This document shows, in pieces, positions 4,954-49,745 of a DNA stretch of 64,000 bases. The translations under genes and the position numbers were made by a program. The DNA lies in contig JAANOX010000047.1 in the NCBI GenBank assembly GCA_020184695.1, positions 1-64,000 of the forward strand, in the 5' to 3' direction. This DNA comes from Histomonas meleagridis 2922-C6/04-290x (lineage: Eukaryota; Protista; Parabasalia). Under the pieces are notes generated by a model, which ran no database searches, had not been told where the DNA came from, and saw nothing but the letters and a program-made list of their open reading frames with translations. The first letter of the stretch is position 1. The number at the start of each line of letters is the position of its first letter.

Positions 4954-5200
4954 TTATGATATAACTATCCTCCAAATATTATAAAATTGTCTTGCGTTTA
5001 TAGTTAGATTAAGCTTTCGACGAGTCATCCCAGGTGATAATCCAATCTTTCGGAAATTTATAATTTCTTCCCTATATTCATTTGTCAAAAGACGTATCTG
5101 CCCATATGTAGTAACATCAATATTATGATTGTGGTCCAAAAACCTTCGGAAAATTTCCATTGTTAATGTCGCCCTTTAAGATAAAAAAGGCACCACAAGG
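4954..5200 (-). mobile_element. Possible MULE/FAR1-like transposase N-terminal fragment
   Basis: C-G-A ... DHNH followed by LTNEYREEIINFRKIGLSPGMTRRKL resembles the Zn-finger end and following helix of Mutator-type transposases. Confidence 0.35.
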
Positions 5201-5217
5201 CTCTGTAGGCCTATGAA

Positions 5218-12806: not shown

Positions 12807-15800
12807 ATGGATTCGATTGTCACCCTCAAGACATCAACGTCTATTACTGACTCGAATGGAAAGCCATTCAGATATAGTACTGATTTCACAGGTTTCCAAA
12901 TGCTTATGGTAGGTTGCTACAACTTGAAAATCCCTTATAAACCTAATGAACTCACTATAATAGTAGTTACCCCAAAGCAAACAAGTTACTACATTCAGCT
13001 AAACGTTCCTTTATCAGTTCAAGGTGTAAATGATGGCGATTCGATTTATATTGTCCCTCAAAATACTCCACTTCCATTCACAGAAGAAATCCCAGAACTT
13101 CCACCAGTTGCACTCCCAGAGCTTAAGACAGGTGCTACACCAGAACTTCTTCGTAATGAAGTTAATATTGGCGATGATATCAACCTCAACATTCAAACCA
13201 AATCACTTCTTAATGATAACAATGACATGCGCATGAACAGGAATGAAGGTACGTCAAAGAAGATCAATCTATTTACCGTTTATGGCTTTAAAGATGATAA
13301 AGGAATTGAATGTCAATACGAAGTTTCATTTCCATTTGCTGTTATGGTTCAACGTGCTCTTAGTTATTTACATCAACGTGCCAAAGGTCAATATTCCATT
13401 CTTTTATGCTTCTCTCCAGCTGTGATCAAATGGTTTGATGAAGATCGTAACCTTGAATACTTCAATCCGGTTGATGGTATGCTTATCCGCGTATTTAAGA
13501 AGAACCAATCACTGTCTATCTATTGTCCACATTTTGGGACTAATTCATTTTTGATTGATATTACCAAACCGGTTAATGATGTTGTTCAATATATTGCTAA
13601 TGATGTTTGCTTTGCCGATTATCGTGGGTATACATTAGTTAATGTTAAACGTGATAATGAATTTGAGCCACTTGATGGACAATTATCCATTCCACAACAA
13701 CGAAATAACTTTGAAGAATTACAATTCCGAAGAATGTATTTTGTATTTTCGAAAGAAACATTTTGCTCACTTGAAAATGCATTAATTGCATATCGAGATA
13801 TGTTAGAAGCACTTGTAAACAAGGATAGTTATATTACACCAGATGAAGCAATTGAACTTGCAGCTTTAGCTATACTATGTGATCCATCGAAACAACCTGA
13901 ACAAAAGAAACTTTTCTCACCACGTTTCCAAGGATATATTAATGATTCAATGTTAAAACCTGCATTAACATATTTCGATTCACATCCAAAACCTTCCGAT
14001 CAAATTAATGCTATCCGTATGTTCTTAGGCAAAGCTCGACGTATACCAGATTTAGCATCTATCCAATTTTCATGTACATTTATTCAAAAAACTCATGATC
14101 AAAAAGATAAGATTCAAGTATATGCACATTTTTCACCAATTCGATTAGCTATTATTAATCGTAAGACAAAGATTATTAATGCAAATATCCCATATTTCCG
14201 TATTAGAGGTATTGAAGTTAATGAACCAACAGTTACAATTAATTATTTAAATGAAGGTAGAGTACCAGTATCAGTAGAATTACGATTTGAACGTAAGTTT
14301 AATATATTTTTATCATATATTAATCAATATTCATCAATTACAAAACAAATCTTTGAAGAACGTGTTCTTAAGAAGGTACAAAACAAACAAATTTCGATTG
14401 ATACAATTGATGAAGAAGATAAAATTGGTTTACATACAACTAATGGTCCAAGTAAACCAGGAGAAGGTGAATTATTTGTTTATGATAGGAAGTTTACTGC
14501 TGAACAAGTACTTAAACTTGCGTTACGTTATCTTAATGAAAAAGAATATCCTGATCAAAAGATTTTAATTCATAAATATGGACAAGCAATTTGGCCAAAA
14601 CCAGATCAATTCATTGGCACATTAGGTATTGATGATGGAATGACAATTAATATTATACGTGTACAACAACAAATTCGATTTAAATTAACAGATGGTACTG
14701 TTAAAGCAGTTATATTCAAAAATCCAGATTTATCAGAACCTATTCGAACTATTATTGGTCAAATATTTACAAAACTTCATATGCCAAAAATCATTGGTTA
14801 TTCTATATTTAGAGAAAAAGAAGAATCAGAACAATCACAAAAACAAAGAACTCAACAATATCGAGCAAATTTAGTCGCATTAGATCCACGTTTATCTATT
14901 CCAGAACAATGTACTGATTTTGAAAGTAAAACTGTTGACGATGTAAAACTTTACTTTAAGAGACAATATATGACATTAACACGTGATGATCTTTCATCTG
15001 CTGCTGCAGCTAAATATGCATATATTGAATGTAAAGATTATATTAATAATAATGATTGTGGTATGACAGAAGATCAAGTTATAGAAGTTGCTATATTATC
15101 AGTATTAATTGAAGCTAAAGTACCTGGTGATACATCATACTTTAATCCTGATAAATTTGCAAGTATAGTACCATCAAACTTTAAAGTTAATTCTAAAATT
15201 CTTGCTAAATTTAAACAACGACTTGCTAAATATGAAAAGATGGATAATATTAATGCAATTCGTCGTTATATTCGAATTGTTAGAGATTTACCAAGATTTG
15301 GTGCACATACATTTCATGTTTTATATCGACCTTTACCAGCTAAAAGTCGACCACATGATGGATATTTATTTGTATGTCCGATTTATTTATTTGTTGAAGA
15401 AAACAACAAACGAATATTAACAATTCCTTATAAATTTGTTATTAATCTTAAGACGGATTCTAAAAGAGTTCAAGTTATTTATGGTAAAGAAAACACAACT
15501 GAATTAAGTACAATTGAATTTAAGACTAAACGTGTTGTAGAATTATCAATGCTTATATCAGGATCATTAACAATTTTCCGTGAATTAATTGTCGAAAGAC
15601 AAATTTCTGATAACAAGAGAGTTCTTGAAGATAGTCAGAAATTACAAGGTATATGGATTGATGAGAATGGTGTATCTCATTCACCTATGATTGATTTACA
15701 ACCTACAAACTCATTACAACGTGCAAGTGGTTTAGATCGTGTATGGCTTGAACTTGCTACAAGATTTGATGATATTATTAAGCAATTATCACTTAGATTA

Positions 15801-18800
15801 AACTTAGTCATACCTAAAGAACCAGGAAAAGATGATTATGCAATTATGATTAATATTCATGATAGAATCTTTAGATTTATTCAACCTGATGGTAAACTTG
15901 GAGATGCTAAACCTGTTCGTGGTTCAATTTTATTTGTAATTCCACGATTCCCAATTATTAGTGTTGTAAATTCATTAAATGTTGAAAAGAAAATTAGACT
16001 TGATATATCAATGAAAGTCCGTGATTTAGTACAAGTTATTAGTCATAAATTTAATACTACTTTATGTAAAGGTTATACTTTATATACTATACCAGAAGAT
16101 GGTGGTGATCCTAAACCTCTTGACTTGAATTTATCATTACCAGAACAAACTGTACATTATGAAAACTTATTATTCAAGCGTAGATTCTTTGCTATTTCTC
16201 AAATCGATTTTATTACAGTTGCTTCTAAACTTGCTACATTTAATGATATTAAAGAACATATATTAACAAGTGGAATTCAAATATCTGTTGAAGATGCAAT
16301 TCATTTAGCTTATTATTCATTATTCCCTAATTCTAATGTCCCTGTTACACCTCAAACAGTACCTAATGATATTACACCATTATTACCACGTAATATTAAA
16401 TGTAAATCAGGTTATAATAAACAATTAATTAAATATTTCACAACAGAACCAATTACTGATAAAGATGTAGCATTAGAGAAATATGTACAATTAGCTCGTA
16501 AAATACCTACATTTGGTTGTGAATATTATCCTGCTATTTATGAAGATAATTCTAATCCTAAGAAGACTGTACGTCGTAATATTCAAGTTTTAATTTCACC
16601 AACTTCAATTATCTTTAGTGATCCTAATGGTAAAGAACAATATATTACTATTGATTATAAGAAATTAATTTCACCTGATGTATTAGATCCATTCTTATCA
16701 TTTAGATATACTTCATCACCATTTGAACCTTTGCTTTATGCTGATATAGAATCAGAAGGTATAGTATCTAAGATTAGTTCTACAATTGAAGAATATCAAA
16801 GAATTATTACTGATGTAAGTAAAACTACAAGTGGAGATGGTAAATTACAAAACATTGAAAAAATTAATGTATTATTATATAAAGGTAATGAAGAAGTTAC
16901 TAAAGAAAATGCACAAAGTCATAAATTCTCATTTGATAAACGTCAAACAGGTGATAAAGTTGCTTCACTTGCAGCTAAACATCTTAAACTTAATACTAAA
17001 GGTCAATATTTATGTTTATTACAATATACTACTGATCATAAACGTTGGCTTTATCATGATGAATATTTCGGTAAAATGAATCCTTATGATGATATGGTAT
17101 TACAAGTCTTTAGTGTTAACTTTGAAATTACAGTACAAAATTCTTCAAGAGTTAAAAAGAACTTCTTCATTGATATTACTAATACTGTAGCAGATTTAAT
17201 ACCTAAAATTGCATTACAATTTTCTATTGATGATTATATAGGTTATTCTTTATTCTTTGAAGAAGAAGGTGTTTTACAACCATTAATGTATCAATTATCT
17301 ATTTATGAACAAATTAAAACACGTAAAATGCCAAACTTAATCTTTAAACATCGTTATTTCTTAATTAATCCATTTATTGATGAACTTTCATTTGACGTTT
17401 TAATGAATACTTATTATCAAGATGTTCGTTCTACAGTATTATCTGGTAATCATGACTTAAATGATACTGAAATAGCAGAATTAGCAATCTTCCAAATTTA
17501 TACAGATCCTTCAAATGATGATGAAACTCATAAAATTGAAATTCCTACTAATTTAGCACCTTATTTACCTAAAGGTATGAAACCTAAACAAGCATTAATT
17601 GATACAATTCGTAAAGCTTTAACTGATAAATCTAAAATTACTACAAGGAATGAAGCTTGTCGTGAATTTATTTCTAGAGCTATGAATAATACATTTGCTT
17701 GTGCTGAGAATTATCATGCAGTAATGATTGAAGATGAAGAGAATAAAGATGAAAATACTGAAAACAAAGAAAAGAAAGATAAGAAAGATAAAAATAAGGA
17801 TAAGAATGCACAAAAAGATAAGAATCGTTCAGTTACTATATCAGTATCAGTTAAAGGTATTGATATTAAAGAATTCCCAAGTCAATCTGATATCGAATTT
17901 ATCCCTTATGAAGAACTTCAATCTCGAATGATCTTAAAAGATTTAATTATCTTTACAAAGAAATCTTATGATGGTAAGAACTTTGTTATTAAGAAATTAC
18001 AATTTAGAACTAAATCTGCTTCATTAATATATAATTATATTGAAACATTTATCGAAATTGTTAATCCACAATTCCAAGAAAGAAATGAAAGACTTAAAGC
18101 ATTCCATCAAGCTACAAAAGAAATTGGAGAAACTATTGTTAATGTATTATATTTAGAAACTGCTAATGCATTAGGTCATTGGTATCCTACAGTATTCCCA
18201 TATTTATTAACTGAGAAAGTTAATACAATCATTGATAGACTTGCAGATTATTATAATATTAAGAATGCTATGACTTATCGATTAGTAGCACAATATGAAG
18301 ATGGTAATTTCCAAGTTTTACCAGCAGATCAAATCTTTGGTAAATATAATATTTCAAACTCAACAAAGATTTATCTTTTAGAATTATTGAAAGATGTCCG
18401 TATTATTAATGATTCAGGTTTAGTTACTACTAATGTTATAGATATATCACTTAATGTAGAAGAAGCTTGTCGACAAATTGCAAGTAACTTCAATTATCAA
18501 TTCCATGAATGTTTCACATTATATGCAAATAATGGTAATGGTTTCGATCCATTATATTTCGATCAAAGTGTAATTTCTCAAACAAATAACTTTAATGAAT
18601 TCTTATTCAAACGTCGATTCTTTATTTTCCCACAAGAAGCATTCTTTGATAATGAAACATTATTCTCTGTTTATGAAGATTGTCATCGTATGGTAATTAA
18701 TAATAAGATTCAAATCCCTCAAGAAAATGATATGTTATGTTTAGCAGTTTATACATTATATTATGAATCTTCAAATCCACTTGAAGTTACACAAAGACAA

Positions 18801-21800
18801 ATTACTAATTTAACTGATTTAATTCCAAGTTCAGTTCAAAGTGGTAATGATTTATTAAGAAGATTTGATAATATATTAAAATCAATTCCACCAATGTCTA
18901 GAACAGAAGCAGCTGCTAAATATATTAGTTATGTCTGTGATCGTCAAGGATTTGGTGTTGAGAAATATAATATTCGTTTCACTGATTTAATTGATACATT
19001 AAAACGTCCACGTCGTGAAGCAGTTTTACTTTTAGGTCCATTTGAAGTATCAATTAAAGATGATACCGAAATTAAAGTCATAGCATCATTTGATTATAAA
19101 TGGATTACAAGTTATGAAATTGAAGATACAAATAAAATTATATTGAAGTTTAATGATCATCAATCGAATTATCATCATGTAATTATTGAAGTCGACAAAG
19201 TTCAACCAATTGTTAGTTTTATCTCTACAATGTATTATTATACTACAAGTAGTTCAATTTTCTTAGAATCAGCAGAACAAATTCGTGGACAATTATCTTA
19301 TATTATCTCACGTAAAGGTGGTAATGAAAAAGAATCAGCTGAAGCAATTACAATTCAAGATACAAGTTATGATAACTTTGATGTAGATGTTACTACATTT
19401 GATAATTATAATGCATTTGATGTTAATTTCGATGATCCTATTGAAAGAGTAGAATTTGCTACATTTGATTCTACTAATTATGATGATTCTGTAGATAGTC
19501 ATTATACTTATACTAAAGTTGATCCAGTTGTAGATATTTATGGTGCAGAAGATGGAGTTGATAATTATTCATGGCGTACTACTGATGAAGGTCTTAAATA
19601 TACAAGAGCTTCAAGAGTTTTAGAAAAGATTAAAGATAACTTCGAAGAATTAAATTCACATTTAGATAGTACTTCACTTGATGAATTTACTCGTAGATTA
19701 GACTTTATTTATGATAACTTAAATGATTTGAATCCAGAAGAAACTAATGAATTTAAAGAGAAACTTAAGAATATTACAGGTAAAATTGATGAATTACGTG
19801 AAAAGGCTCAATTAATGGATCCATTAGATACTAAATATACTGGTTATAATGATGAAATTAAGACTACAATGAGAGATATTATGGGTATATTTGGTTCTGC
19901 TAAAGATGCATTAAATAATGAATTACAATTATGTAAGAAACAACAATATTCTTATTCACAAATATCAGATAATGGTCAAATATCTGCAATATCAAAGAAT
20001 TTAATTGATATCTCTGAAGCTACTGAAGCTTTAACAGTATCTATAATTTCGAAATATATGAAATTCCAAGAAATGGGTACTAATCCATCAAATATTATTT
20101 CATCACTTAAAGAAATATCTACAAATCTTACAAAATTAGCACGTAATTATACTGAAAATGAAGATCAAAAATTAATTGATAAATATATTATCCCATTATT
20201 AGGTGATTTAATTATTAAACTTAAACAATTAAAGGATATATGTTTCATTACTGATGGTACTAATGATATTATTGAAATGGAAGGTAAAATTGAAAATATT
20301 GTAAATTCTGTTAAAGAATCATTAAGTAAAGTTAGTGAAAACAGAAATACAATGATGTCACAACATTATAAGATTTATACTGGTTCAACTACAGCAGTTC
20401 TTAAATCAGCTCAAATATTTATCCAAAAATCAAAAGATTTAAAGGAATTAAAAGATGATAAAAGTTTAAGCGAAGCTACAAAAGTTATTGTTGAATCACT
20501 TTATTCAAATCTTACATATAATACAAGTAAAATAGCTAAAGCTTCAAAGATATTAAAGGCAAATCCAAATGATGATAAAGTACGTTCAGATGCATTATAT
20601 TCATCAACTAAAACTTTAATTACATTAAATAATGGTATTGAAGAATTAAACAAACAAAATGATGTTAAAGTTAAATCAATAATTGAATTATTAAGGAAAG
20701 ATCTCGATGTTATTAATAATTGTAACTTAGAAGTTAGTACAATATCAATTACACCACAAAATGTTTCAAGATTACAATCTGATTTATCATTAATCTTAAC
20801 AAGTACTGATAAAATTGATGATTTATCATTATCTAAACTTAAAGCAGATGAAAAGAAATTCATTGATACAACAATTTCTTCAATTAAAACATTCCATTCT
20901 AAATTAGAAGGTTTAATTCCACGATTTGAAGATTTCCCTTCATCAGGTGATTTAGTATATGCAATTCAAACTATAGCTTTAGATGCTTATAAGAAATTAC
21001 CTGATATTAGTAAAACTATTACATTACAACAAAAGGCTTCTAATGATCCACTTCATCAAATATTATATGAACGACTTTATAGTGACTTAAATGCTACACT
21101 TATTGAAACAATACCTACTGAAGAATTTATGAAATGTCAACATATAGTACAATTCCATCAAGCACAAGCAGAATTATTCCAATTAACTAATACAATGCAT
21201 AAGACTGGTGATGAAGATATGGTTAAAAATTATAATGAATTATATACAAAACTTCAACAAAGAACTAAATCTGTTGAAGAAATTTATTTCGATGGTTATG
21301 AATATCGTAAACATCTTCATGCTAAACCATTCTCACAAAATTATATTCAGGATGCCGAAAATTATATTGATAAAGTCCAAAAATCTCTTACACATGTACA
21401 AAACTTAATATTTGAATATCCAGCAATTGGTGATTTAGATTTAATTATTGGTTCTGTAATTAATTATTTCGATTCTGCTAAAAAGGCATTAAAGAATACA
21501 CAAATTTCTTATTATAGACCTAAACCTTCTAAAGAATTTATAACTAAAGCTACAAACATTATTCAAGAATCAATTGAAGTATTAGCAAAAATATTAAATA
21601 GTGATGAAACTTTAACTAATCCAATGTTAGCAGATCAACTTAAAAGTGAAATAGAATTCTTACAAAAACAAAAGAATAAAATACCTAAAATTGCTGATAA
21701 AACAGATCTATTTTATCATACAATTGAAAAGATTGAAGAACATATGAATCAACGTGAAATTGTTAATGCTGCAGATAATCAAAATATTCCATTAAATAAT

Positions 21801-24800
21801 ACAGTTCGTAAATATAAAGAAATTCTTAAAGTTCCACCACCTACAATTGAAGTTACTAAAGGATGTTTGAAAGAATTTATTCCAACATTAGATAAACTTC
21901 AAGAAACTATTAATAATATCTCTAAAAGTGAAAAGGTTAAAGATAATAATGAATCACAAACTATCTTCAATGAATGGGTTAATGCTATTCAACAAGTTAA
22001 ACATTCAGTTTCTTCACATATTAATCAAAAAGATTATAATGATCAATTAGCATTAAATGATAAAGATGCTATATTGAATTTACAAGCTAAGATATCAATG
22101 TTACCACCAAATATTCGTCAATTAATACCTAAAGAATTAAATGAAAAACTTGCACAAGAAATTTCTCAATTTGTACAAAAAGGTAATGATGCTGTTAATT
22201 GTGTTCGTCATTTACCAAATGTTCAAATGCCAGAAATCGATGCTAAACAATTCCATAAAATTGATTCCGAAGCAGAAATTCAAGAATCTATACCTGAAAT
22301 TTCAATACAAATACGTGAATTTAAGAATATCCTTAATGAAATTCATGCATCACCTTTATTATTACCTCATCCACAAACTAAAGAATTAGTTCATCAAATG
22401 ATACAAAACCTTGGAAAAATTGATGAAGAAATTTCAAATAATATTAATAATGAAAAATTATTAACAGAGAAAATGACACGTTTACGTGATTCATTATTAT
22501 TTGTAACATCGACAACAGAATTAATTTCACCTGTATTAGGTATGAACAAACTTCATGATTCAGCTAAAACAATTCAATATAATACTAATAATGTATTACG
22601 TTATTTAATGAAACCTCATATGACACCAGAAAGTTCTAAAGAATTTGAAAAATCATTATTAGATACAATTAAGAAAGTCGAGAAAGATTGGAATACAGCT
22701 AAACAAAATATCGATGGATTACCAGATAATGTTAAAACTATGATTAATGCATTATCAGCATCACTTTCTTATGCGAATTCTTCATTATCTAAAATGAAGC
22801 CACGTCAAAAACAAGCATTTTGTGATGATTTATATTCATCAATTTATACAACATTACCACAATTATTTAAACAATCAGAATGTGATGATTTAATTGATCC
22901 ATTACTTTCATTATTTGAAGTTACTTCTAAATTTACTTCTAAGCCTCATGTTGATATTAGAATTACTGCGCCATTAATTATTAATAAACAAATTTTACCA
23001 GAAGAAACTTTATCAGGTTTAGATGATCAAGTTGTCGATTTAATAGATATTACTAATGAAAATATATCTGGTGAAATTTATGATAATTATTCTGATTCAT
23101 TATCAATGATTTATGATCATCAAGATTTATTACCTATTTATGTAACTTATGCTTCATCTATCTTACAACCAATCTTTATGAAACATAGCTTAAATAAATT
23201 AATTGATGCACAAAAGATTATTTCTTGTACTGATAAATCTGCTAAACAAAGAACTCGACATTTAGAATTATCTACAATTACTACAACTATTAAAGCAGCT
23301 AAATGTATCGAAACTTTACGAAACTTAATGAAATATATTGATGAAATATTTAATGATTCTAATTCATTTACTAATGATTCTGCATGTTATTATTATAAAT
23401 CTACTCAAAAAGCATTACAAAATGTCGATACTAAAATGTTAATTAATTGTCAATCAATTTCTGCAGCAATATTAAATTATTCTACAATGCATGAATTACA
23501 AACTAATGTATCATTATTAATTCAAAGCACAGAAAATGAAAAAGATTTAGATTCAGTAATTCAACCAATTGTAGAATGTTTCAATGAATATTCTCAATTA
23601 GTATATCAAACAGATTTAATATTCTCAGCATTATTCCATAATGAACTTTCTTCATTAATATGTACTATTGATGAATTACGTTTAACTGAAAAGAAAATAC
23701 CTAAAGAAGTATTTAGAAAGATTCATGGATTTATTAATGATTTATCAACTAAAGATTATTTATTATATTTCGATCCAGTACAAATGAATGCACTTTCTAT
23801 CAAATATAAACAATTTATTAAAGAATCAATTCCAATCATATTAAATAATATTACAAATAAGAATGTAATTCTTGAACAACAAAAGATTTTATCTTCAATT
23901 AACCCTGTGATTCAATATTGGGAAAGATATCCTAATTCATTTGATGGTGTCCGACTTGGTAATGAAATTAATTCATCACTTTATATATTAGAGAAACAAT
24001 TAAGTGTTTGTCAATATTCTATGCCTCAACAACAATTTATTTATGACTTTAATTTACCTAAATCTCAAATTAATTATATTGATATCATTTCTTCTATTGA
24101 TAGTTCTATTAATACTGCAGCTAAAGCTTGTTCACAATTGTTTAATTCAATTACACCTGAAACATTTGCACAACAACAACAAGTTATATTAAATTCATTA
24201 GAACATTTAAAGGGATTAATTGGTGAACATTATCCAATGAATTATAGTGATAAATCAATTAATTTAATCGAATCTAATAGAGTAATATCACAAAAAGATA
24301 TTTTACTTAATTTAATTGATGATAAAGTATGTTTAGATATAGCTAAGAATGCATTTAGTCAATTAGAACAATCAATTAAAATTATACAACAAAATCAAGA
24401 ACAACAAAAACAAAAAGAAGTTGATAATACTAAGAAACTTGAACTTGAAAATATTCAATCAATAGGTAAATTATCAATTATTGATATTGATCAAGATAAT
24501 ATTAAGAAGAATATTAGTGAAGCATTAAACATTGAAATTATATCACAAGATCAACAAGAATTATTCATTACTACATTCTTAAAGTCAAGTTTAGAAAATA
24601 TGATTCATTCATTACAACAAGAACAACTTTGTCAATTTCCAAATATCTTAAAGAAGATTAATAACTTAAACACTATTAATATTAAACCAAATCAATTTGA
24701 AGAAAATAAGAATCAAATCCTTCGACAATTTGAAACATTAAACAATTTACAAAAACTTAAAGAAATTCAATCACAAATGACACCAAATCAAATCATTGAA

Positions 24801-27800
24801 AATCAAGCTTTATTATCCAATATAATAATTAATTTATTATCACCAAATTGTAAATTAATATTTGATTCTTATATTAGACAAAATAAAGATATGGAACAAC
24901 ATATATTTGATAGTTTATTCAATTATTATCCTAATGAAACTATTAATTCTAAGCCAATTAATGGTAATCCAATTATTCATGGATTCTCTGATTTAATTCT
25001 TTTGTCACAATCATTAATTTCAATTCTTCATGAAATTTGTGTTGTTAATCAACAAATTTATAAATTCATTTCTACACCAGAAGGTCAAAAAGTTTTAGAA
25101 ACACCAATTTCATCACAATTATTATTAGAAATTCAACAAACAATTCAAACATTAATTGATTTAGAAAAGTCTAAAGATAATTTAGATATGTATATTAAGA
25201 ATCTATCATTAGAACAATGTATTAGAATCCATCGTATAATTTATCATACATTAACATTAATTAATGAGAATTCAATCAATTATAACTTCACAAGTACTTC
25301 ACATAATATTAAACAAATTATTCGTCAAATTAATATTAAACAACAAGAAATTATTAAACAAAATCAAAAAGCATTAGTATTTGAATTCTTAGATCCTTCA
25401 TTAATATTTAGAACATTATATTCTAATGCATTTAAGATTACTTACTTATATTTCATTATTAAATTAATTTCTGTTTATAATAAATTAATTTCTAATAATC
25501 CAAATTCAAAAGAAGATATAATTTCTCAAGACTTAATAAAGAAGAATTTATCAATTATTAAAAAATTAACTTTCTTGAATGAAAAAGAATTATCTAATAA
25601 ATTAAATAGTTTATCAAATGCAACTGAAGTTATTCAATCAATTCAAGCACAATTAATTCATTTAACACAATCTTCATTCATTCAAGAAATATCTAAATAT
25701 GTACCAGATTTTAATGATGCAATTCAACAAGGATTCCAATCATTATTATTACAAGAACATAATAATAAAGCAATTTCTATTTCATCACAAGAATTATTAG
25801 TTTCAATGTCATCAATACAAAGTAATAATATCTTTAATTTCATCTCTAAATTAACATTAAATAATTCTGATTCACAACAAATTCTTAAATTAATTGAAGA
25901 TAATCCAGAAATTAAAGCTAAATTAAATGAATGTGAGAAACGTATGAAAGAAATAACTTCTGATCAATTATTAAGTGCTAAAATTATTGTAAGTAAAATC
26001 CATGATTTATATATTAAATCACCAGAAGAAATATTAAACCAATTCAAACCTGAAGAAATTTTAGATGCTTATGGATTAATGAAATATGAATTATGTGAAT
26101 CTATTAAATCTATTGATGAACATGCATTAACTGTTTATAAGAAGAATGAAATATTTGATCGTGCTGCTTTAATTCAAAGACAAACTAAAGATCATTCATA
26201 TTCATTAATTAAACCAGATGAATCTAAAACAATAATAGAAAATTGTCAAAAATTACAAACTATTTATGATGTTATAACTGATTTAAGAGAAATTCAACAA
26301 TTAATATTACAAGAAAATAATTCATTTGTAGAACTTTCTAAAGAAAACATTAAAAAATTATCTACGAATGATGCAATGAAATTACAAAATAAGATTAATG
26401 ATTTCTATAAATTAAATGAGAATAAAGATGAATTAAAAGCTTTAGTTTCACAAAACTCAATTGAAGATAATTATATGATTTATTCATTAATTGATGATTT
26501 AACTAATGTATTACAAAATAATATTCAACAAGTTTATTCAGATGATAAACTTAATATTATTTCTAATGGTATATCTAAACAAAAAGATGTTGATCTTCTA
26601 AACGTTGAAATTAATTCATCTGATTTAACTAAAAAGATTGAAATTTCTCAAGAATATTCAAATCGTTGTGCACTTTGTAGTCAATTAACATTATTAAGTG
26701 CTAAAATTAATGAATTACCTTCAATGAAGAATGCGAAATTAGTTTCTAATTCAATACCTTTACAAGATGTTCAACAAGCTAATGATATGGCAATTAAATT
26801 ATTACCAATCATGAACTCACCAGAAGCAATTAATACTATGATATCTGGAGTTTCTACACAAGATTTAACTAATCGTTTAGCAGTAATTAATGAACTTTGT
26901 CAAATATTATTACCTAAAGATCAAAATAATAATTCATTATTTGATACAGAATTGAAAGTTTTAAGTATTGATGAAATTACAAATGTTAATTTATATCAAA
27001 AGGCTTCACATATTGAAATTACTAATGCAGTAGTTGATGCTTTAACTTCAATGATTCAAGTATTCCCAACAATGTCACAATTATCAAATGATGAATGTAA
27101 AGAAATATTTGTATCAGAAAACACTACAGCTATTAAATTATTAACCAATTTATTACATTCTTCAACACCATCATATTCACAAGTTAAACAATTAATTGAA
27201 ATTTCACCACAATTAATTACATCAATGACTAAAGTTATCCTACAATTAAACCAACAATTAAAGAATAAGTTTGATGATCCAATGCGTTCATTTGAATTAA
27301 TTAAGAAATTAGCTATTTCATCTGTAGATGCACCTAATAATCCTAAAGATGGTACTGAATATCGTAAATCATTAGCAGAATTATTAAATAATCTTAAAGT
27401 AGCTCAAGCAGTTACCGAAATGAATAACAAAGAAGAAGATTTACATGAGAAAGCAATGCAAACTATTGCTAACTTACATAGAGCTATTCAAAGAAGAGAT
27501 ATTGAAGAAATTAATGGTTGTTTAATTGATATTCAAGCATTAAATGTTCGTACTAATGAAGCAGGTAATAACATTCAATTCATTAAAGAAGTTACATCTA
27601 AAATTATTGGACTTCAACCTAAAGTTTTAGATATTTATTCTACACAAGGTAAACTTGATGATCAACTTATTAAACAATCAGATGATTTATGTAAATTACT
27701 TGAACAAATCATTAATAAAGAAACTAATGATCCATTTAAGACAGTTAATGAAATTAAATCATTCCAAAGTGTTGGTAAACAATTTGTTAATACTAAACAA

Positions 27801-29660
27801 ACATTACAAAAGTATACTAAGTCATTAGCTAAAGGATTCCAAGAGAAAGATGTAATGGCTACTGATAAATCAATTAATAATATCATTAAATTAATTTCAT
27901 TAATGGAATCTTCTGCTATTAAAGGTGCTAATGTTTCTAATTGTAAATCTCAACAAGCTATTAAAGATTTATTAAAGATGACACGTACTACTGCTTTAGC
28001 TATTAAAGGATTATTTGAATTAAAGGAAAATTCAGCAGTATCATTAACTACTGTTAAAAGATCTACTCGATCATTTGTTAGAGTTGTCGATTCAATTAAT
28101 GATATGATTGATGAACAAGAATATTGGGATAAAGATAAACCAGTTGAAGAAATTGATAATAAGAAACTTGAATTCTTACAAAACGTTTCTAAGGCTATTT
28201 CATTCTCTTTATCTACATTAACTGCTAGATCAGAAGCTAAAATCCCAGAAACTTATAAAGCTATAATGGATAAACAACAAAATGAAGTTAAATCAATCAT
28301 TGCTTCATTAAAGAAAGCATCAGAATCATTACTTAAACTTAACAAAGATAAATCAGCAGAATCCGATTTCAATAATTGCTTAAATACATTTATAACACAA
28401 ATAGAATTATGTTCTTCTGCATCTAATACAGAAGTTGAATCAATGGCAGATAACATTTATGTATTAACAGGTTCAATGACTGAATTAGAAACAGCTTTAA
28501 TGAGATTAACTACAATTGCACAATTACATCCAGATACTGTTAATGCAGAGAAACTTCCACGTTCATTCGAAATGCCATCTGTACCAGATACAAAGATCTC
28601 AATCTCTAAAGCTAATGAAGATTTAATTAAATTCATAAAAGAATATCAAACAGAAGAATCTAAATTTGTTTCAATAATAAATACTACAAATAATGATCAA
28701 CTTACTAATAAATTATTAGATTTAATCCCATTAATGGAGAAGATTGTTAAACAAATCCTTATAGTATCTGTTAAAACATTTACTTTAAGACTTCAAACTG
28801 CTTTAACAGGTTGCGCGACTACAATTGTATTAAACTTTGATCAATTAATTAAAGGTTTACATTCTAAACTTTTATTACGTGGTGATTGGTCTCAGACTTC
28901 AACAAATACATTAAAACAAATTAAATTAAATCTCGATTCTGTTTTAGATCATAGTAAAGAAGCAGTCGAAATTTCACTTAAGGAATCTTCTACACGTGAT
29001 TCTTATGTAGTTAAAGTAATGGCTGTAGCTCAACCAATTCAAGACATTACTACAACTATCACTGATTGTCATAAGAAGATCGAATCGAAGCCTTCTTCAA
29101 TGACACGCGAATGGGCTATGCAAACTTTAGCTATAGGTTCTTCATTAACTAATACTATTCTTAAAGTGATAATGCATGCTAAAGATCATCCTCAAACTCA
29201 GAACATTGATAATTTACTTAAACATGGCCAAACTATTTCAACTATAATTCCTCCATTAATTAACGCCGTTAATGAAATCGCTGATGGTAAACATAAAGAA
29301 CCTGAAACAATTGTAATCGAACAAATTAATAAGTTACAAACATTGTGCAAAGATTTCTTGGGTTCAATTAAGAACGACGCTGATAAAACTGAAGAAAAGA
29401 CTTTGAATGACACTCTGAAGATGATATTACAAAACGCTCAACAACTTTCTTCAATGGCTGAAACATCATTAAATAACAGAAGAGCTCAAGCAAAGGCTGC
29501 AGCTGCTGGTGGAAAGAGAACAAAGGCTGGAACAAGACAAATGTCTGCGGCAACAAAGACAACGTTGTTGAAGAGATTGGAATTAGAATCAAGAGTTATT
29601 AAGGCAAGAATTATATTGGCAAAGAACGAGGCAAGACTACAGGCATTGGACCAAAAATAA
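12807..29660 (+). CDS. Giant talin-like protein (5617 aa): extra N-terminal ubiquitin-like domain, five F0-F1-F2-F3 FERM modules, long helical rod, C-terminal I/LWEQ (THATCH)-like domain
   Basis: Uninterrupted 16.85-kb ORF. KWFDEDRNLEYF...KKNQSLSIY...IDITKPVNDVVQYIA...DYRGYTL matches the talin F0/F1 pattern and recurs five times. The C-terminus has REWAMQTL...LLKRLELESRVIKARIILAKNEARLQAL, like the Sla2/HIP1R/talin THATCH core and dimerisation helix. Confidence 0.85.
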   Translation: MDSIVTLKTSTSITDSNGKPFRYSTDFTGFQMLMVGCYNLKIPYKPNELTIIVVTPKQTSYYIQLNVPLSVQGVNDGDSIYIVPQNTPLPFTEEIPELPPVALPELKTGATPELLRNEVNIGDDINLNIQTKSLLNDNNDMRMNRNEGTSKKINLFTVYGFKDDKGIECQYEVSFPFAVMVQRALSYLHQRAKGQYSILLCFSPAVIKWFDEDRNLEYFNPVDGMLIRVFKKNQSLSIYCPHFGTNSFLIDITKPVNDVVQYIANDVCFADYRGYTLVNVKRDNEFEPLDGQLSIPQQRNNFEELQFRRMYFVFSKETFCSLENALIAYRDMLEALVNKDSYITPDEAIELAALAILCDPSKQPEQKKLFSPRFQGYINDSMLKPALTYFDSHPKPSDQINAIRMFLGKARRIPDLASIQFSCTFIQKTHDQKDKIQVYAHFSPIRLAIINRKTKIINANIPYFRIRGIEVNEPTVTINYLNEGRVPVSVELRFERKFNIFLSYINQYSSITKQIFEERVLKKVQNKQISIDTIDEEDKIGLHTTNGPSKPGEGELFVYDRKFTAEQVLKLALRYLNEKEYPDQKILIHKYGQAIWPKPDQFIGTLGIDDGMTINIIRVQQQIRFKLTDGTVKAVIFKNPDLSEPIRTIIGQIFTKLHMPKIIGYSIFREKEESEQSQKQRTQQYRANLVALDPRLSIPEQCTDFESKTVDDVKLYFKRQYMTLTRDDLSSAAAAKYAYIECKDYINNNDCGMTEDQVIEVAILSVLIEAKVPGDTSYFNPDKFASIVPSNFKVNSKILAKFKQRLAKYEKMDNINAIRRYIRIVRDLPRFGAHTFHVLYRPLPAKSRPHDGYLFVCPIYLFVEENNKRILTIPYKFVINLKTDSKRVQVIYGKENTTELSTIEFKTKRVVELSMLISGSLTIFRELIVERQISDNKRVLEDSQKLQGIWIDENGVSHSPMIDLQPTNSLQRASGLDRVWLELATRFDDIIKQLSLRLNLVIPKEPGKDDYAIMINIHDRIFRFIQPDGKLGDAKPVRGSILFVIPRFPIISVVNSLNVEKKIRLDISMKVRDLVQVISHKFNTTLCKGYTLYTIPEDGGDPKPLDLNLSLPEQTVHYENLLFKRRFFAISQIDFITVASKLATFNDIKEHILTSGIQISVEDAIHLAYYSLFPNSNVPVTPQTVPNDITPLLPRNIKCKSGYNKQLIKYFTTEPITDKDVALEKYVQLARKIPTFGCEYYPAIYEDNSNPKKTVRRNIQVLISPTSIIFSDPNGKEQYITIDYKKLISPDVLDPFLSFRYTSSPFEPLLYADIESEGIVSKISSTIEEYQRIITDVSKTTSGDGKLQNIEKINVLLYKGNEEVTKENAQSHKFSFDKRQTGDKVASLAAKHLKLNTKGQYLCLLQYTTDHKRWLYHDEYFGKMNPYDDMVLQVFSVNFEITVQNSSRVKKNFFIDITNTVADLIPKIALQFSIDDYIGYSLFFEEEGVLQPLMYQLSIYEQIKTRKMPNLIFKHRYFLINPFIDELSFDVLMNTYYQDVRSTVLSGNHDLNDTEIAELAIFQIYTDPSNDDETHKIEIPTNLAPYLPKGMKPKQALIDTIRKALTDKSKITTRNEACREFISRAMNNTFACAENYHAVMIEDEENKDENTENKEKKDKKDKNKDKNAQKDKNRSVTISVSVKGIDIKEFPSQSDIEFIPYEELQSRMILKDLIIFTKKSYDGKNFVIKKLQFRTKSASLIYNYIETFIEIVNPQFQERNERLKAFHQATKEIGETIVNVLYLETANALGHWYPTVFPYLLTEKVNTIIDRLADYYNIKNAMTYRLVAQYEDGNFQVLPADQIFGKYNISNSTKIYLLELLKDVRIINDSGLVTTNVIDISLNVEEACRQIASNFNYQFHECFTLYANNGNGFDPLYFDQSVISQTNNFNEFLFKRRFFIFPQEAFFDNETLFSVYEDCHRMVINNKIQIPQENDMLCLAVYTLYYESSNPLEVTQRQITNLTDLIPSSVQSGNDLLRRFDNILKSIPPMSRTEAAAKYISYVCDRQGFGVEKYNIRFTDLIDTLKRPRREAVLLLGPFEVSIKDDTEIKVIASFDYKWITSYEIEDTNKIILKFNDHQSNYHHVIIEVDKVQPIVSFISTMYYYTTSSSIFLESAEQIRGQLSYIISRKGGNEKESAEAITIQDTSYDNFDVDVTTFDNYNAFDVNFDDPIERVEFATFDSTNYDDSVDSHYTYTKVDPVVDIYGAEDGVDNYSWRTTDEGLKYTRASRVLEKIKDNFEELNSHLDSTSLDEFTRRLDFIYDNLNDLNPEETNEFKEKLKNITGKIDELREKAQLMDPLDTKYTGYNDEIKTTMRDIMGIFGSAKDALNNELQLCKKQQYSYSQISDNGQISAISKNLIDISEATEALTVSIISKYMKFQEMGTNPSNIISSLKEISTNLTKLARNYTENEDQKLIDKYIIPLLGDLIIKLKQLKDICFITDGTNDIIEMEGKIENIVNSVKESLSKVSENRNTMMSQHYKIYTGSTTAVLKSAQIFIQKSKDLKELKDDKSLSEATKVIVESLYSNLTYNTSKIAKASKILKANPNDDKVRSDALYSSTKTLITLNNGIEELNKQNDVKVKSIIELLRKDLDVINNCNLEVSTISITPQNVSRLQSDLSLILTSTDKIDDLSLSKLKADEKKFIDTTISSIKTFHSKLEGLIPRFEDFPSSGDLVYAIQTIALDAYKKLPDISKTITLQQKASNDPLHQILYERLYSDLNATLIETIPTEEFMKCQHIVQFHQAQAELFQLTNTMHKTGDEDMVKNYNELYTKLQQRTKSVEEIYFDGYEYRKHLHAKPFSQNYIQDAENYIDKVQKSLTHVQNLIFEYPAIGDLDLIIGSVINYFDSAKKALKNTQISYYRPKPSKEFITKATNIIQESIEVLAKILNSDETLTNPMLADQLKSEIEFLQKQKNKIPKIADKTDLFYHTIEKIEEHMNQREIVNAADNQNIPLNNTVRKYKEILKVPPPTIEVTKGCLKEFIPTLDKLQETINNISKSEKVKDNNESQTIFNEWVNAIQQVKHSVSSHINQKDYNDQLALNDKDAILNLQAKISMLPPNIRQLIPKELNEKLAQEISQFVQKGNDAVNCVRHLPNVQMPEIDAKQFHKIDSEAEIQESIPEISIQIREFKNILNEIHASPLLLPHPQTKELVHQMIQNLGKIDEEISNNINNEKLLTEKMTRLRDSLLFVTSTTELISPVLGMNKLHDSAKTIQYNTNNVLRYLMKPHMTPESSKEFEKSLLDTIKKVEKDWNTAKQNIDGLPDNVKTMINALSASLSYANSSLSKMKPRQKQAFCDDLYSSIYTTLPQLFKQSECDDLIDPLLSLFEVTSKFTSKPHVDIRITAPLIINKQILPEETLSGLDDQVVDLIDITNENISGEIYDNYSDSLSMIYDHQDLLPIYVTYASSILQPIFMKHSLNKLIDAQKIISCTDKSAKQRTRHLELSTITTTIKAAKCIETLRNLMKYIDEIFNDSNSFTNDSACYYYKSTQKALQNVDTKMLINCQSISAAILNYSTMHELQTNVSLLIQSTENEKDLDSVIQPIVECFNEYSQLVYQTDLIFSALFHNELSSLICTIDELRLTEKKIPKEVFRKIHGFINDLSTKDYLLYFDPVQMNALSIKYKQFIKESIPIILNNITNKNVILEQQKILSSINPVIQYWERYPNSFDGVRLGNEINSSLYILEKQLSVCQYSMPQQQFIYDFNLPKSQINYIDIISSIDSSINTAAKACSQLFNSITPETFAQQQQVILNSLEHLKGLIGEHYPMNYSDKSINLIESNRVISQKDILLNLIDDKVCLDIAKNAFSQLEQSIKIIQQNQEQQKQKEVDNTKKLELENIQSIGKLSIIDIDQDNIKKNISEALNIEIISQDQQELFITTFLKSSLENMIHSLQQEQLCQFPNILKKINNLNTINIKPNQFEENKNQILRQFETLNNLQKLKEIQSQMTPNQIIENQALLSNIIINLLSPNCKLIFDSYIRQNKDMEQHIFDSLFNYYPNETINSKPINGNPIIHGFSDLILLSQSLISILHEICVVNQQIYKFISTPEGQKVLETPISSQLLLEIQQTIQTLIDLEKSKDNLDMYIKNLSLEQCIRIHRIIYHTLTLINENSINYNFTSTSHNIKQIIRQINIKQQEIIKQNQKALVFEFLDPSLIFRTLYSNAFKITYLYFIIKLISVYNKLISNNPNSKEDIISQDLIKKNLSIIKKLTFLNEKELSNKLNSLSNATEVIQSIQAQLIHLTQSSFIQEISKYVPDFNDAIQQGFQSLLLQEHNNKAISISSQELLVSMSSIQSNNIFNFISKLTLNNSDSQQILKLIEDNPEIKAKLNECEKRMKEITSDQLLSAKIIVSKIHDLYIKSPEEILNQFKPEEILDAYGLMKYELCESIKSIDEHALTVYKKNEIFDRAALIQRQTKDHSYSLIKPDESKTIIENCQKLQTIYDVITDLREIQQLILQENNSFVELSKENIKKLSTNDAMKLQNKINDFYKLNENKDELKALVSQNSIEDNYMIYSLIDDLTNVLQNNIQQVYSDDKLNIISNGISKQKDVDLLNVEINSSDLTKKIEISQEYSNRCALCSQLTLLSAKINELPSMKNAKLVSNSIPLQDVQQANDMAIKLLPIMNSPEAINTMISGVSTQDLTNRLAVINELCQILLPKDQNNNSLFDTELKVLSIDEITNVNLYQKASHIEITNAVVDALTSMIQVFPTMSQLSNDECKEIFVSENTTAIKLLTNLLHSSTPSYSQVKQLIEISPQLITSMTKVILQLNQQLKNKFDDPMRSFELIKKLAISSVDAPNNPKDGTEYRKSLAELLNNLKVAQAVTEMNNKEEDLHEKAMQTIANLHRAIQRRDIEEINGCLIDIQALNVRTNEAGNNIQFIKEVTSKIIGLQPKVLDIYSTQGKLDDQLIKQSDDLCKLLEQIINKETNDPFKTVNEIKSFQSVGKQFVNTKQTLQKYTKSLAKGFQEKDVMATDKSINNIIKLISLMESSAIKGANVSNCKSQQAIKDLLKMTRTTALAIKGLFELKENSAVSLTTVKRSTRSFVRVVDSINDMIDEQEYWDKDKPVEEIDNKKLEFLQNVSKAISFSLSTLTARSEAKIPETYKAIMDKQQNEVKSIIASLKKASESLLKLNKDKSAESDFNNCLNTFITQIELCSSASNTEVESMADNIYVLTGSMTELETALMRLTTIAQLHPDTVNAEKLPRSFEMPSVPDTKISISKANEDLIKFIKEYQTEESKFVSIINTTNNDQLTNKLLDLIPLMEKIVKQILIVSVKTFTLRLQTALTGCATTIVLNFDQLIKGLHSKLLLRGDWSQTSTNTLKQIKLNLDSVLDHSKEAVEISLKESSTRDSYVVKVMAVAQPIQDITTTITDCHKKIESKPSSMTREWAMQTLAIGSSLTNTILKVIMHAKDHPQTQNIDNLLKHGQTISTIIPPLINAVNEIADGKHKEPETIVIEQINKLQTLCKDFLGSIKNDADKTEEKTLNDTLKMILQNAQQLSSMAETSLNNRRAQAKAAAAGGKRTKAGTRQMSAATKTTLLKRLELESRVIKARIILAKNEARLQALDQK
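13255..19260 (+). repeat. Five diverged ~390-420-aa FERM-head repeats within the giant ORF (approx. 13255-14400, 14420-15600, 15680-16830, 16860-18080, 18130-19260)
   Basis: Recurring [GC]-[YF]-[TS]-[LI] ... PL..qLS[IL]..Q ... L.F[KR].R[YF]F-like F1 motif (~13627, 14793, 16068, 17238, 18507). Recurring F2/F3 junction (ARRIPDLA, VRDLPRFG, ARKIPTFG, AMNNTFAC, CDRQGFG at ~14035, 15280, 16495, 17680, 18935). Confidence 0.85.
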
Positions 29661-49620: not shown

Positions 49621-49745
49621 TGCTATCAAAAAGTTCAAACAACGAATTTGTAAGGATTTTATCCTCAGAAATTGATAATGAGACGGTTTTGAATGATGAA
49701 CGTTAAAAATATTTATAGAATACGTTAATTGTTGTAAATTTCTTC

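What the first reader, a model, noticed from the sequence alone, without database searches (positions are those of the whole stretch)
12807..29660. Giant talin-like protein with five tandem F0-F3 FERM heads
Canonical talin has one F0-F1-F2-F3 head, a helical rod and a C-terminal I/LWEQ actin-binding domain (established). This 5617-aa ORF shows the talin-style F0/F1 signature (W..ed..L..f..dG..i.vf.k.q.l.I ... iDi...V.dlv..Ia......gYtL) five times at ~1.15-1.3-kb spacing, plus an extra F0-like domain at the N-terminus. A ~3400-aa helical region and a THATCH-like end follow (seen in sequence). I know of no described talin with five complete heads; the closest case I recall is Dictyostelium FrmA, with two talin-like FERMs and no rod. 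Parabasalids are not known to have integrins. The protein could therefore be a multivalent membrane-to-actin linker for a different receptor class, such as BspA/Pmp tails, during amoeboid adhesion (inference). This is the best candidate in the window for an undescribed system.
Basis: partly seen in the sequence, partly recalled or inferred. Interest (0 to 1): 0.82.

Follow-up and report, generated by a model that had tools for sequence, protein, structure and literature searches.

The report
Five-headed talin-like giant protein
This Histomonas gene encodes a 5617-residue protein with five complete talin-type membrane-binding heads in a row, a very long rod and a talin/Sla2-like tail fold; the layout is conserved across parabasalid parasites, a group in which talin-like proteins had not been reported in the literature searched.

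Summary
Window 12807-29660 (+) is one uninterrupted 5617-aa ORF of Histomonas meleagridis. It has an N-terminal ubiquitin-like domain, then five ~400-aa modules that are mutually homologous (20-30% identity). A profile of the five matches the talin-1 head at E~1e-20, ahead of kindlin (E 3.5e-9) and ERM proteins (~1e-8). An AlphaFold model of aa 1-542 (pLDDT 86) shows Ubl + F0-F1-F2-F3, and its 12 best PDB matches are all talin heads.

All 24 giant relatives found, including T. vaginalis TVAG_445430 and T. foetus TRFO_05648, have exactly five heads. In the 12 orthologues used for the tree, each head position forms its own clade.

The last ~370 aa fold (pLDDT 85) into a talin-rod-type bundle, a five-helix THATCH-like core and a terminal helix. 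Fold searches put HIP1, HIP1R, Sla2/End4 and talins on top, each aligned at its THATCH region. HMM searches do not reach I_LWEQ, and the ~3000-aa middle rod has no recognisable family.

Parabasalids also have a ~2500-aa single-head paralogue with talin's exact layout.

The ligand, actin binding and the adhesion role are inferred. First-stage notes of this scan flag further five-head giants elsewhere in this genome; these are unverified. Verdict: new variant of a known kind.

The parts
12807..29660 (+). Whole gene: uninterrupted 5617-aa ORF plus stop codon
   Evidence: Identical to NCBI GO595_000580 except that the NCBI model lacks aa 3928-4368.
12807..13076 (+). Extra N-terminal ubiquitin-like (F0-like) domain, aa 1-90
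   Evidence: AF2 beta-grasp fold, pLDDT ~95. Aligns with F0 of TVAG_101030. A partial match to the head profile at the N-terminus of four orthologues.
13077..13253 (+). Disordered linker, aa 91-149
   Evidence: pLDDT < 50 for aa 102-145.
13254..14432 (+). FERM head 1 (aa 150-542): F0 150-231, F1 233-309, F2 316-410, F3 419-526
   Evidence: AF2 model pLDDT 85.7. The 12 best Foldseek PDB matches are all talin heads, E 8e-20 to 4e-17. Head-profile match.
14439..15671 (+). FERM head 2 (aa 545-955)
   Evidence: Pfam FERM_M E 2.4e-7. Full-length match to the head profile. Forms its own clade, support 100/99.
15684..16841 (+). FERM head 3 (aa 960-1345)
   Evidence: Pfam FERM_f0 E 0.009 and FERM_M E 0.01. 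It is the head most similar to the single-head paralogues.
16842..18131 (+). FERM head 4 (aa 1346-1775), with a Lys/Asp/Glu-rich insert before F3
   Evidence: Pfam FERM_M E 6e-4.
18165..19289 (+). FERM head 5 (aa 1787-2161)
   Evidence: Pfam FERM_M E 1.5e-5 and RA_2 E 0.026.
19290..19676 (+). Acidic, aromatic-rich head-rod linker (aa 2162-2290)
   Evidence: Sequence read. Lowest conservation and occupancy among orthologues.
19677..28553 (+). Rod (aa 2291-5249), collinear in all orthologues, no recognised family
   Evidence: Conservation profile. Profile hits only to designed helical bundles. No Pfam family. Atlas: nothing for aa 2600-3600, weak talin-rod neighbours for aa 4700-5260. Giant aa 2581-3578 is homologous to single-head paralogue P0033 (its aa 813-1780).
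28554..28979 (+). Penultimate helical bundle (aa 5250-5391), talin-rod/FAT/vinculin type
   Evidence: AF2 model. VIA Z 15.7 to talin R7, 140 aligned residues, rmsd 2.3.
28995..29495 (+). THATCH-like five-helix core (aa 5397-5563)
   Evidence: VIA: talin R13, Z 13.1, 161 aligned residues. Foldseek: Sla2 REND+THATCH, HIP1R THATCH core and talin R13 at prob 1.0. AFDB Swiss-Prot top hits are HIP1, HIP1R, Sla2, End4 and talins, each at its C-terminus. Atlas I/LWEQ cluster 0.92.
29547..29654 (+). Terminal amphipathic helix (aa 5581-5616), the most conserved stretch of the tail; candidate dimerisation helix
   Evidence: AF2 helix 332-367 after a disordered linker. Consensus LLKRLxLESRVIxARxILE is invariant or nearly so across 40 family members.

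Best explanation
The gene encodes a divergent, parabasalid-specific member of the talin kind of membrane-to-actin linker in which the head has been multiplied. The order is: an N-terminal ubiquitin-like domain; five complete talin-type FERM heads (F0-F1-F2-F3) in tandem; an acidic linker; a ~3000-aa rod that is probably built of helical bundles; a talin-rod-type bundle; a THATCH-like five-helix core; and a terminal amphipathic helix.

Shown: the domain folds, the talin-type affinity of the heads, the strict conservation of five heads, and their ancient, position-specific orthology.

Inferred mechanism: each head docks on the inner face of the plasma membrane and/or on cytoplasmic tails of surface proteins through its PTB-like F3. 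The conserved differences in F3 charge between head positions suggest five different specificities. The rod acts as a long, force-bearing spacer. The C-terminal THATCH-like module with its terminal helix binds F-actin and dimerises, as in talin and Sla2/HIP1. The protein would then gather up to five (ten in a dimer) membrane attachment points onto one actin connection during amoeboid adhesion, crawling or phagocytosis.

It arose from the same stock as the ~2500-aa single-head paralogue that parabasalids also keep.
For: The ORF is intact. RNA-labelled contigs cover it collinearly without joints.

The five modules are mutually homologous. Their profile hits the talin-1 head at E 9e-21 over F0(C-terminal part)-F1-F2-F3, in register, versus kindlin 3.5e-9 and radixin 1.9e-8.

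The AF2 model of aa 1-542 shows Ubl + Ubl-Ubl-helical-PH-like domains. The 12 best Foldseek matches are all talin heads at E 8e-20 to 4e-17 with ~396 aligned columns.

All 24 giants have exactly five heads, and each head position is a clade at 100/98-99 support.

The C-terminal model has pLDDT 84.9. PDB top hits are Sla2 REND+THATCH, HIP1R THATCH and talin R13. Talin R13 aligns over 161 residues at Z 13.1. In Swiss-Prot AFDB, 14 of the top 20 hits are I/LWEQ proteins, each aligned at its C-terminal THATCH region, for example human talin-1 2163-2528.

The language-model neighbours are I/LWEQ and talin clusters, 0.92 with 200/256 shared features.

Single-head paralogues of 2481-2782 aa have the FERM at aa ~5-375 and the same C-terminus, which is talin's layout and size.

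F3 net charge differs by head position and the pattern holds across 12 orthologues.
Against: No HMM-level significance links the tail to I_LWEQ or to any solved THATCH, even with a 40-sequence profile.

An exhaustive HMMER search with the tail profile found only this family, no canonical talin.

Structural Z-scores and TM-scores for helical bundles lie near the generic background (the tool's own note; TM 0.3-0.57).

The middle ~3000 aa of the rod has no detectable similarity to talin rod domains or VBS, and no internal repeats.

The heads lack talin's long F1 loop; only head 2 has a short insert there.

No ligand, actin-binding or localisation data exist. No integrin-like partner is known, and the BspA-like gene in the window lacks an NPxY tail.
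Confidence: 0.6

Rival explanations
1. An endocytic or phagocytic adaptor rather than an adhesion linker. The tail works like that of HIP1/Sla2, coupling actin to internalising membrane. The five PTB-like F3 domains collect NPx[Y/F]-type or other sorting-signal tails of cargo receptors.
For: The best fold matches of the tail are HIP1, HIPR-1, End4, HIP1R and Sla2, as much as talins. T. vaginalis BspA receptors with FDNPx[YF] tails were interpreted as endocytic (PMC2843621). From general knowledge, Dictyostelium talin A also acts in phagocytosis.
Against: There is no ANTH domain or central coiled coil as in HIP1/Sla2. The N-terminus is a talin-type FERM with F0. A size of 5617 aa with a long rod fits a tension-bearing spacer better than a coat adaptor. 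The two roles are not mutually exclusive.
Confidence: 0.2
2. A convergent mosaic, not a talin relative. An array of talin/kindlin-like FERM domains was fused to a lineage-specific helical rod whose end merely shares the common up-down helical-bundle topology. The tail may bind something other than actin, for example parabasalid-specific cytoskeletal fibres or microtubule-associated structures.
For: There is no sequence-level link of the rod or tail to talin or I_LWEQ. Helical-bundle Z-scores are near background. Cyclin-D1-binding protein 1 homologues also appear among the fold hits.
Against: The hits are specific. In Swiss-Prot AFDB the I/LWEQ proteins found (HIP1, HIP1R, HIPR-1, Sla2/End4, talins) crowd the top 20, each aligned exactly at its THATCH region and spanning the whole model, terminal helix included. 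An independent language-model search also gives I/LWEQ first. Sub-threshold Pfam hits recur in Talin_IBS2B, Talin_R4, Talin_middle and I_LWEQ. The single-head paralogue reproduces talin's full layout and length.
Confidence: 0.15
3. An annotation or assembly artefact: several adjacent FERM genes and a rod gene read through as one ORF.
For: The NCBI model of the same gene is 440 aa shorter.
Against: A single ORF of 16.8 kb with no stop in a 27% GC genome cannot arise by chance. 24 independent lineages keep the same collinear 5000-7400-aa protein. RNA-labelled contigs cross the disputed region without joints.
Confidence: 0.02

Closest known systems
Talin (vertebrate talin-1/2; Dictyostelium TalA/TalB)
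   Same: An N-terminal FERM with the atypical F0 ubiquitin-like domain ahead of F1-F2-F3. The head profile and head model match talin best. The order is linker, long rod, then a C-terminal bundle + THATCH-like core + terminal helix, matching talin R12-R13-DD. The parabasalid single-head paralogue also matches talin's length of ~2500 aa.
   Different: Five heads instead of one, plus an extra N-terminal Ubl. The rod is ~3450 aa versus ~2000 aa. There are no significant Pfam hits to Talin_middle, VBS, Talin_IBS2B or I_LWEQ. There is no long F1 loop. The organism belongs to a lineage where neither integrins nor talin have been reported (PMC10846614).
HIP1 / HIP1R / Sla2 / End4 (I/LWEQ-THATCH endocytic adaptors)
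   Same: Their C-terminal regions (REND/THATCH core plus the following helix) are the top structural matches of the tail.
   Different: Those proteins have an N-terminal ANTH domain and a central coiled coil and are ~1000 aa long. This protein has FERM heads and a bundle-type rod.
Dictyostelium FrmA and other multi-FERM proteins (MyTH4-FERM myosins VII/XV)
   Same: More than one FERM domain in one polypeptide. FrmA's two FERMs are talin-like (recalled from memory, not tested here).
   Different: Those have two FERMs, not five, and no rod with a THATCH-like end. The myosin FERMs are paired with MyTH4 and lack F0. In the head-profile search, myosin VII scored far below talin (E 2.6e-7 vs 9e-21).
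Kindlins (fermitin family)
   Same: F0-containing FERM; second-best family for the head profile and model (E 3.5e-9; E ~1e-14).
   Different: Kindlins carry a PH domain inserted in F2 and have no rod or actin-binding tail. No such insert is seen in the head-1 model.

Membership tests
Talin family | N-terminal FERM made of F0 and F1 ubiquitin-like domains, a helical F2 and a PTB/PH-like F3 | tested here: met
   AF2 of aa 1-542 shows all four subdomains. Foldseek top 12 are talin heads over ~396 columns. The five-module profile matches the talin-1 head at E 9e-21. All five modules match the profile end to end.
Talin family | A single head per polypeptide | tested here: not met
   Five heads plus an extra Ubl, conserved in all 24 giants. 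The single-head condition is met only by the paralogues (TVAG_101030, GPJ56_010551, TRFO_11406).
Talin family | Long unstructured insert in F1 (F1 loop) | tested here: not met
   No insert in heads 1, 3, 4 and 5. A ~13-aa insert at the equivalent place in head 2 (placement judged from the talin alignment).
Talin family | Rod of 4- and 5-helix bundles (R1-R13) with vinculin-binding helices, recognisable by Talin_middle, VBS, Talin_R4 and IBS2B profiles | tested here: inconclusive
   Only the last two bundles were modelled, and they are talin-rod-like (Z 15.7 to R7, 13.1 to R13). No significant Pfam hit. Sub-threshold Talin_R4/IBS2B/middle hits recur in relatives. Atlas finds nothing for aa 2600-3600 and weak talin-rod neighbours for aa 4700-5260.
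Talin family | C-terminal I/LWEQ (THATCH) module followed by a dimerisation helix | tested here: inconclusive
   Fold and order are met and the language-model neighbours are I/LWEQ. Pfam I_LWEQ is not matched by the window protein and is matched by only 1 of 40 relatives, at E 0.005. PDB profile searches find no THATCH.
Talin family | F-actin binding and receptor-tail (NPxY) binding | not testable with these tools
   This needs co-sedimentation and pull-down experiments.
HIP1/Sla2 family | N-terminal ANTH domain and central coiled coil before the THATCH | tested here: not met
   Pfam finds no ANTH domain. The N-terminal 2160 aa are FERM heads.
Kindlin family | PH domain inserted into F2 | tested here: not met
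   F2 of head 1 is a compact helical domain of ~95 aa without a beta-rich insert. No PH Pfam hit lies within any F2.

The most novel reading that the evidence does not exclude
Parabasalia carry a genuine, very old talin lineage: a single-head, talin-sized form and a five-head giant derived from it. That would mean the talin-type FERM-rod-THATCH force coupler predates or exists outside Amorphea and evolved independently of integrins. The five heads, each kept as a separate orthologous unit with its own charge signature, would have five distinct tail or lipid specificities. The giant would then be a multivalent receptor-clustering mechanolinker with no counterpart in animals or amoebae, and probably important for tissue invasion by amoeboid trichomonads.
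Probability: 0.4. Interest if true: 0.85.

Novelty: new variant of a known kind. Interest (0 to 1): 0.7.

Why it matters
Two recent papers on talin evolution place talin only in Amoebozoa and Opisthokonta. One says that talin-like molecules may exist in other crawling lineages (PMC10846614). The other calls the timing of talin's origin relative to integrins an open question (PMC12686525).

A talin-type FERM-rod-THATCH-like family in Parabasalia makes that question testable in organisms that crawl and adhere without integrins, such as Trichomonas, Tritrichomonas and Histomonas.

The strictly conserved five-head array is an architecture I found described nowhere. It offers a natural experiment on multivalency in membrane-cytoskeleton coupling.

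These organisms are pathogens of people, cattle, cats and poultry whose virulence depends on adherence and amoeboid transformation. The protein is therefore also a candidate for ordinary localisation and knock-down studies.

Tried and rejected
- Self-BLAST of the whole protein returned nothing useful. Cutting it into modules was needed.
- Pfam on the whole protein and on the tail: no I_LWEQ, Talin_middle or VBS.
- PDB sequence searches found no THATCH, talin-rod, vinculin or catenin hits, only designed helical bundles. The queries were the tail alone, an 11-sequence profile, a 40-sequence profile and two rod profiles.
- The exhaustive HMMER search with the tail profile reached only this family, not canonical talins.
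- A window-by-window HMM search for internal repeats in the rod gave only scores of 11 bits or less.
- Atlas on rod aa 2600-3600 found nothing recognisable.
- The tree with single-head FERMs left the backbone among the six groups unresolved. The single-head group sits beside head 1 at only 82 SH-aLRT, so the order of duplications cannot be stated.
- Locus-tag and keyword literature searches found no paper on these proteins.
- The artefact reading (fused genes) was rejected on ORF integrity, conservation and RNA contigs.
- A profile-profile comparison with an I/LWEQ alignment was not run, because no tool gave me canonical talin, HIP1 or Sla2 tail sequences and I did not type any from memory.
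Full report
**1. The observation**

Window 12807-29660 (+) is a single ORF of 5617 codons with an ATG start and no internal stop. The region averages about 27% GC, so an open frame of 16.8 kb cannot be accidental. A database search shows the organism is Histomonas meleagridis. The NCBI protein GO595_000580 is identical except that it lacks aa 3928-4368 of the window's ORF. Contigs of four RNA-labelled public runs cover nt 23600-27000 collinearly, apart from small gaps between contigs (about 28 nt at 25360-25387 in X1). They have no mismatches and no splice-like joints, and depth rises towards the 3' end. The uninterrupted ORF is therefore the better gene model. The RNA label of those runs is the tool's guess, and contigs cannot exclude rare isoforms.

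**2. The five heads**

Cutting the first 2160 aa at the recurring motif gives five modules: aa 150-542, 545-955, 960-1345, 1346-1775 and 1787-2161. All ten pairs align at E 5e-7 to 2e-22 with only 20-30% identity, so the duplications are old. Pfam finds FERM_M at the same relative place in every module (E from 0.1 to 2.4e-7), with weak FERM_f0 and RA_2 matches ahead of it.

A profile of the five modules (A1) hits the talin-1 head at E 9e-21 (profile positions 64-368 against chain residues 72-378 of the best hit, 8t0d). The alignment covers the end of F0, then F1, F2 and F3. Against the talin head crystal construct 3ivf the numbering is in register (profile 64-367 against residues 61-367). The next families are kindlin-2 (E 3.5e-9), radixin and moesin (~2e-8) and myosin VII (~3e-7).

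An AlphaFold model of aa 1-542, built on 60 aligned modules, has mean pLDDT 85.7. It shows:
- a ubiquitin-like domain at aa 1-90;
- a disordered linker (pLDDT under 50 at aa 102-145);
- two further ubiquitin-like domains, F0 (150-231) and F1 (233-309);
- a helical F2 (316-410);
- a seven-stranded sandwich capped by a long helix, F3 (419-526).

Its twelve best PDB matches are all talin heads (E 8e-20 to 4e-17, ~396 aligned columns). Kindlins follow at ~1e-14 and ERM proteins at ~1e-13. The extra N-terminal domain also aligns with the F0 of the T. vaginalis single-head paralogue (E 6e-4).

**3. Conservation**

Word-based and exhaustive searches found 24 giant relatives of 5000-7437 aa. They include T. 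foetus TRFO_05648 and T. vaginalis TVAG_445430. Every one has exactly five full heads, and some show the partial N-terminal F0-like match as well.

In a maximum-likelihood tree of 60 modules from 12 orthologues, each head position forms a clade with 100% ultrafast bootstrap and 98-99% SH-aLRT. The five-fold duplication therefore predates the divergence of all sampled lineages, and no head has been lost or homogenised since.

The twelve orthologues compared are collinear over the whole length, with mean occupancy 0.73-1.0 per 100-aa bin.

The net charge of F3 differs by position, and the pattern holds across 12 orthologues: head 2 +5.8, head 4 +4.2, head 1 +1.5, head 3 -1.6, head 5 -6.3. This fits five non-equivalent binding surfaces, which is an inference.

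**4. The tail**

By sequence there is no I_LWEQ signal. This holds for Pfam on the tail, phmmer against the PDB, an 11-sequence profile and a 40-sequence profile.

By structure the picture is different. The AF2 model of aa 5250-5617 (pLDDT 84.9) has nine bundle helices, a disordered linker and a lone terminal helix.

- Foldseek on the PDB ranks the Sla2 REND+THATCH region first (E 3e-3). The HIP1R THATCH core and talin R13 also score probability 1.00 among the top seven (TM 0.56-0.57 on the target).
- The second aligner splits the model. Residues 1-142 match talin R7, TLNRD1, FAT and vinculin bundles (Z up to 15.7). Residues 148-314 match talin R13 over 161 residues (Z 13.1, rmsd 3.1). The tool warns that such Z values are near the generic background for helical bundles.
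- The specificity argument is stronger in Swiss-Prot AFDB (550,129 entries). There, 14 of the top 20 matches are HIP1, HIPR-1, talin A, End4, HIP1R, sponge talin, talin B, human, mouse and chicken talin-1, talin-2 and Sla2. Each aligns through its C-terminal THATCH region (human talin-1 2163-2528; Sla2 601-956) and spans model residues ~8-368. The other six are cyclin-D1-binding protein 1 homologues and an uncharacterised S. pombe protein.
- An independent protein-language-model search also puts I/LWEQ clusters first (0.92, 200/256 features), followed only by talin-rod families.
- Sub-threshold Pfam hits in relatives fall repeatedly in Talin_IBS2B, Talin_R4, Talin_middle, VBS-like and I_LWEQ.

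The terminal helix is the most conserved part of the tail (LLKRLxLESRVIxARxILE) and has a 3-4 hydrophobic spacing. From general knowledge, this is the position of talin's dimerisation helix, which is needed for actin binding.

I conclude that the tail has the THATCH fold and order (about 80%). Homology to I/LWEQ is likely but unproven, and actin binding is inferred.

**5. The rod**

Residues ~2290-5250 have no Pfam family. Profiles of two segments hit only designed helical bundles and repeat proteins. That is indirect evidence for a helical, heptad-like composition. The Atlas finds nothing for aa 2600-3600 and only weak talin-rod neighbours for aa 4700-5260 (0.74-0.78). No internal sequence repeats are detectable. 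So "~3400-aa helical region" is plausible but was directly verified only for the last 368 aa.

**6. Sister families**

The tail profile also found eleven proteins of 2481-2782 aa with one FERM at aa ~5-375 and the same tail. They include T. vaginalis TVAG_101030, H. meleagridis GPJ56_010551 and T. foetus TRFO_11406. That is talin's exact layout and length, again without canonical Pfam rod or tail hits.

The Histomonas single-head protein aligns with the giant in three places: the FERM; a ~1000-aa rod block (its aa 813-1780 against giant aa 2581-3578); and the last ~550 aa. T. foetus additionally has headless paralogues that match only rod plus tail (TRFO_20136 against giant aa 3350-5614, E 6e-155).

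In a tree with the single-head FERMs added, the backbone is unresolved, so the order of events cannot be given.

First-stage notes of this scan report further five-head giants on other pieces of the same genome. I could not verify them.

**7. Mechanism**

*Shown:* fold, architecture, conservation.

*Inferred:* the heads attach to the membrane and/or to cytoplasmic tails through F3. The rod is a long spacer that can bear force. The tail binds F-actin and dimerises. The result is a multivalent membrane-to-actin coupler.

A possible ligand class is the FDNPx[YF] tail found in a T. vaginalis BspA subfamily (PMC2843621), but nothing here tests it. The BspA-like ORF in this window has neither the motif nor a tail.

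An endocytic or phagocytic role (HIP1/Sla2-like) is a live alternative and is not exclusive of the adhesion role.

**8. What is known**

The searched literature holds no paper naming these locus tags and none linking talin to parabasalids or metamonads. A 2023 review states that talin has not been identified outside Amoebozoa and Opisthokonta (PMC10846614). A 2025 study of talin evolution does not mention these lineages (PMC12686525). A proteomic study lists a different T. vaginalis FERM protein, TVAG_180570, among proteins enriched in its comparison (PMC7885099). Its relation to this family is unknown.

The sequences themselves have been public as hypothetical or "FERM domain-containing" proteins. 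What is new is the reading, not the gene.

**9. Verdict**

A real, conserved, expressed gene. It is a new variant of the talin kind: five heads, a longer rod, and a lineage where talin-like proteins were not reported. It fails strict talin membership on head number and on sequence-level rod and tail signatures. Interest 0.7.

Noticed in passing
window 24588-25910 (aa 3928-4368): The NCBI model of this gene (GO595_000580, 5177 aa) omits this 441-aa stretch. Contigs from RNA-labelled runs cross it collinearly with no joint, so the omission looks like an annotation or assembly difference rather than an intron.
   Followed up: yes
outside the window: P0033 (H. meleagridis GPJ56_010551), P0038 (TVAG_101030), P0035 (TRFO_11406): A single-head, ~2500-2780-aa paralogue family with one talin-type FERM at the N-terminus and the same C-terminal domain. 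It is the closest parabasalid analogue of canonical talin.
   Followed up: partly
outside the window: P0017 (TRFO_20136), P0025 (TRFO_26694), P0054: Headless relatives that match only the giant's rod and tail (P0017 against giant aa 3350-5614, E 6e-155). They are either true rod-only paralogues or truncated gene models.
   Followed up: partly
other pieces of the same genome (scan notes s1-326164, s1-326200, s1-309806): First-stage notes report further five-head talin-like giants elsewhere in the H. meleagridis assembly, so the species may carry two or three giant paralogues. Not verified here.
   Followed up: no
window ~17733-17825 (aa ~1643-1673, head 4): A Lys/Asp/Glu-rich low-complexity insert between F2 and F3 of head 4. 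Head 2 has a ~13-aa insert at the place of talin's F1 loop.
   Followed up: partly
window 58652-63334 (-): A 1560-aa ORF ending in a bacterial-type response-regulator receiver domain (Pfam Response_reg, E 1e-9). This is unusual for a eukaryote and may be a hybrid signalling protein.
   Followed up: no
window 45166-49638 (-) and 50517-52412 (+): A 1490-aa PAS-domain adenylate/guanylate cyclase and a RasGEF lie downstream. They are signalling genes with no evident link to the giant.
   Followed up: no
window 30334-31068 (-): An ORF with a weak TNP-like RNase H N-terminal domain match (E 7.5e-4), possibly a transposase remnant just downstream of the giant gene.
   Followed up: no
window 54095-55936 (-): V-type ATPase catalytic subunit A. 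It coincides with the only GC-rich stretch of the window (GC 0.44 against ~0.27 elsewhere).
   Followed up: no
window 56564-57964 (+): A BspA-type LRR protein (LRR_5, E 1.7e-27). The mechanical ORF has no NPx[YF] motif and no cytoplasmic tail, and its N-terminal third looks non-coding, so the true start is probably later.
   Followed up: partly
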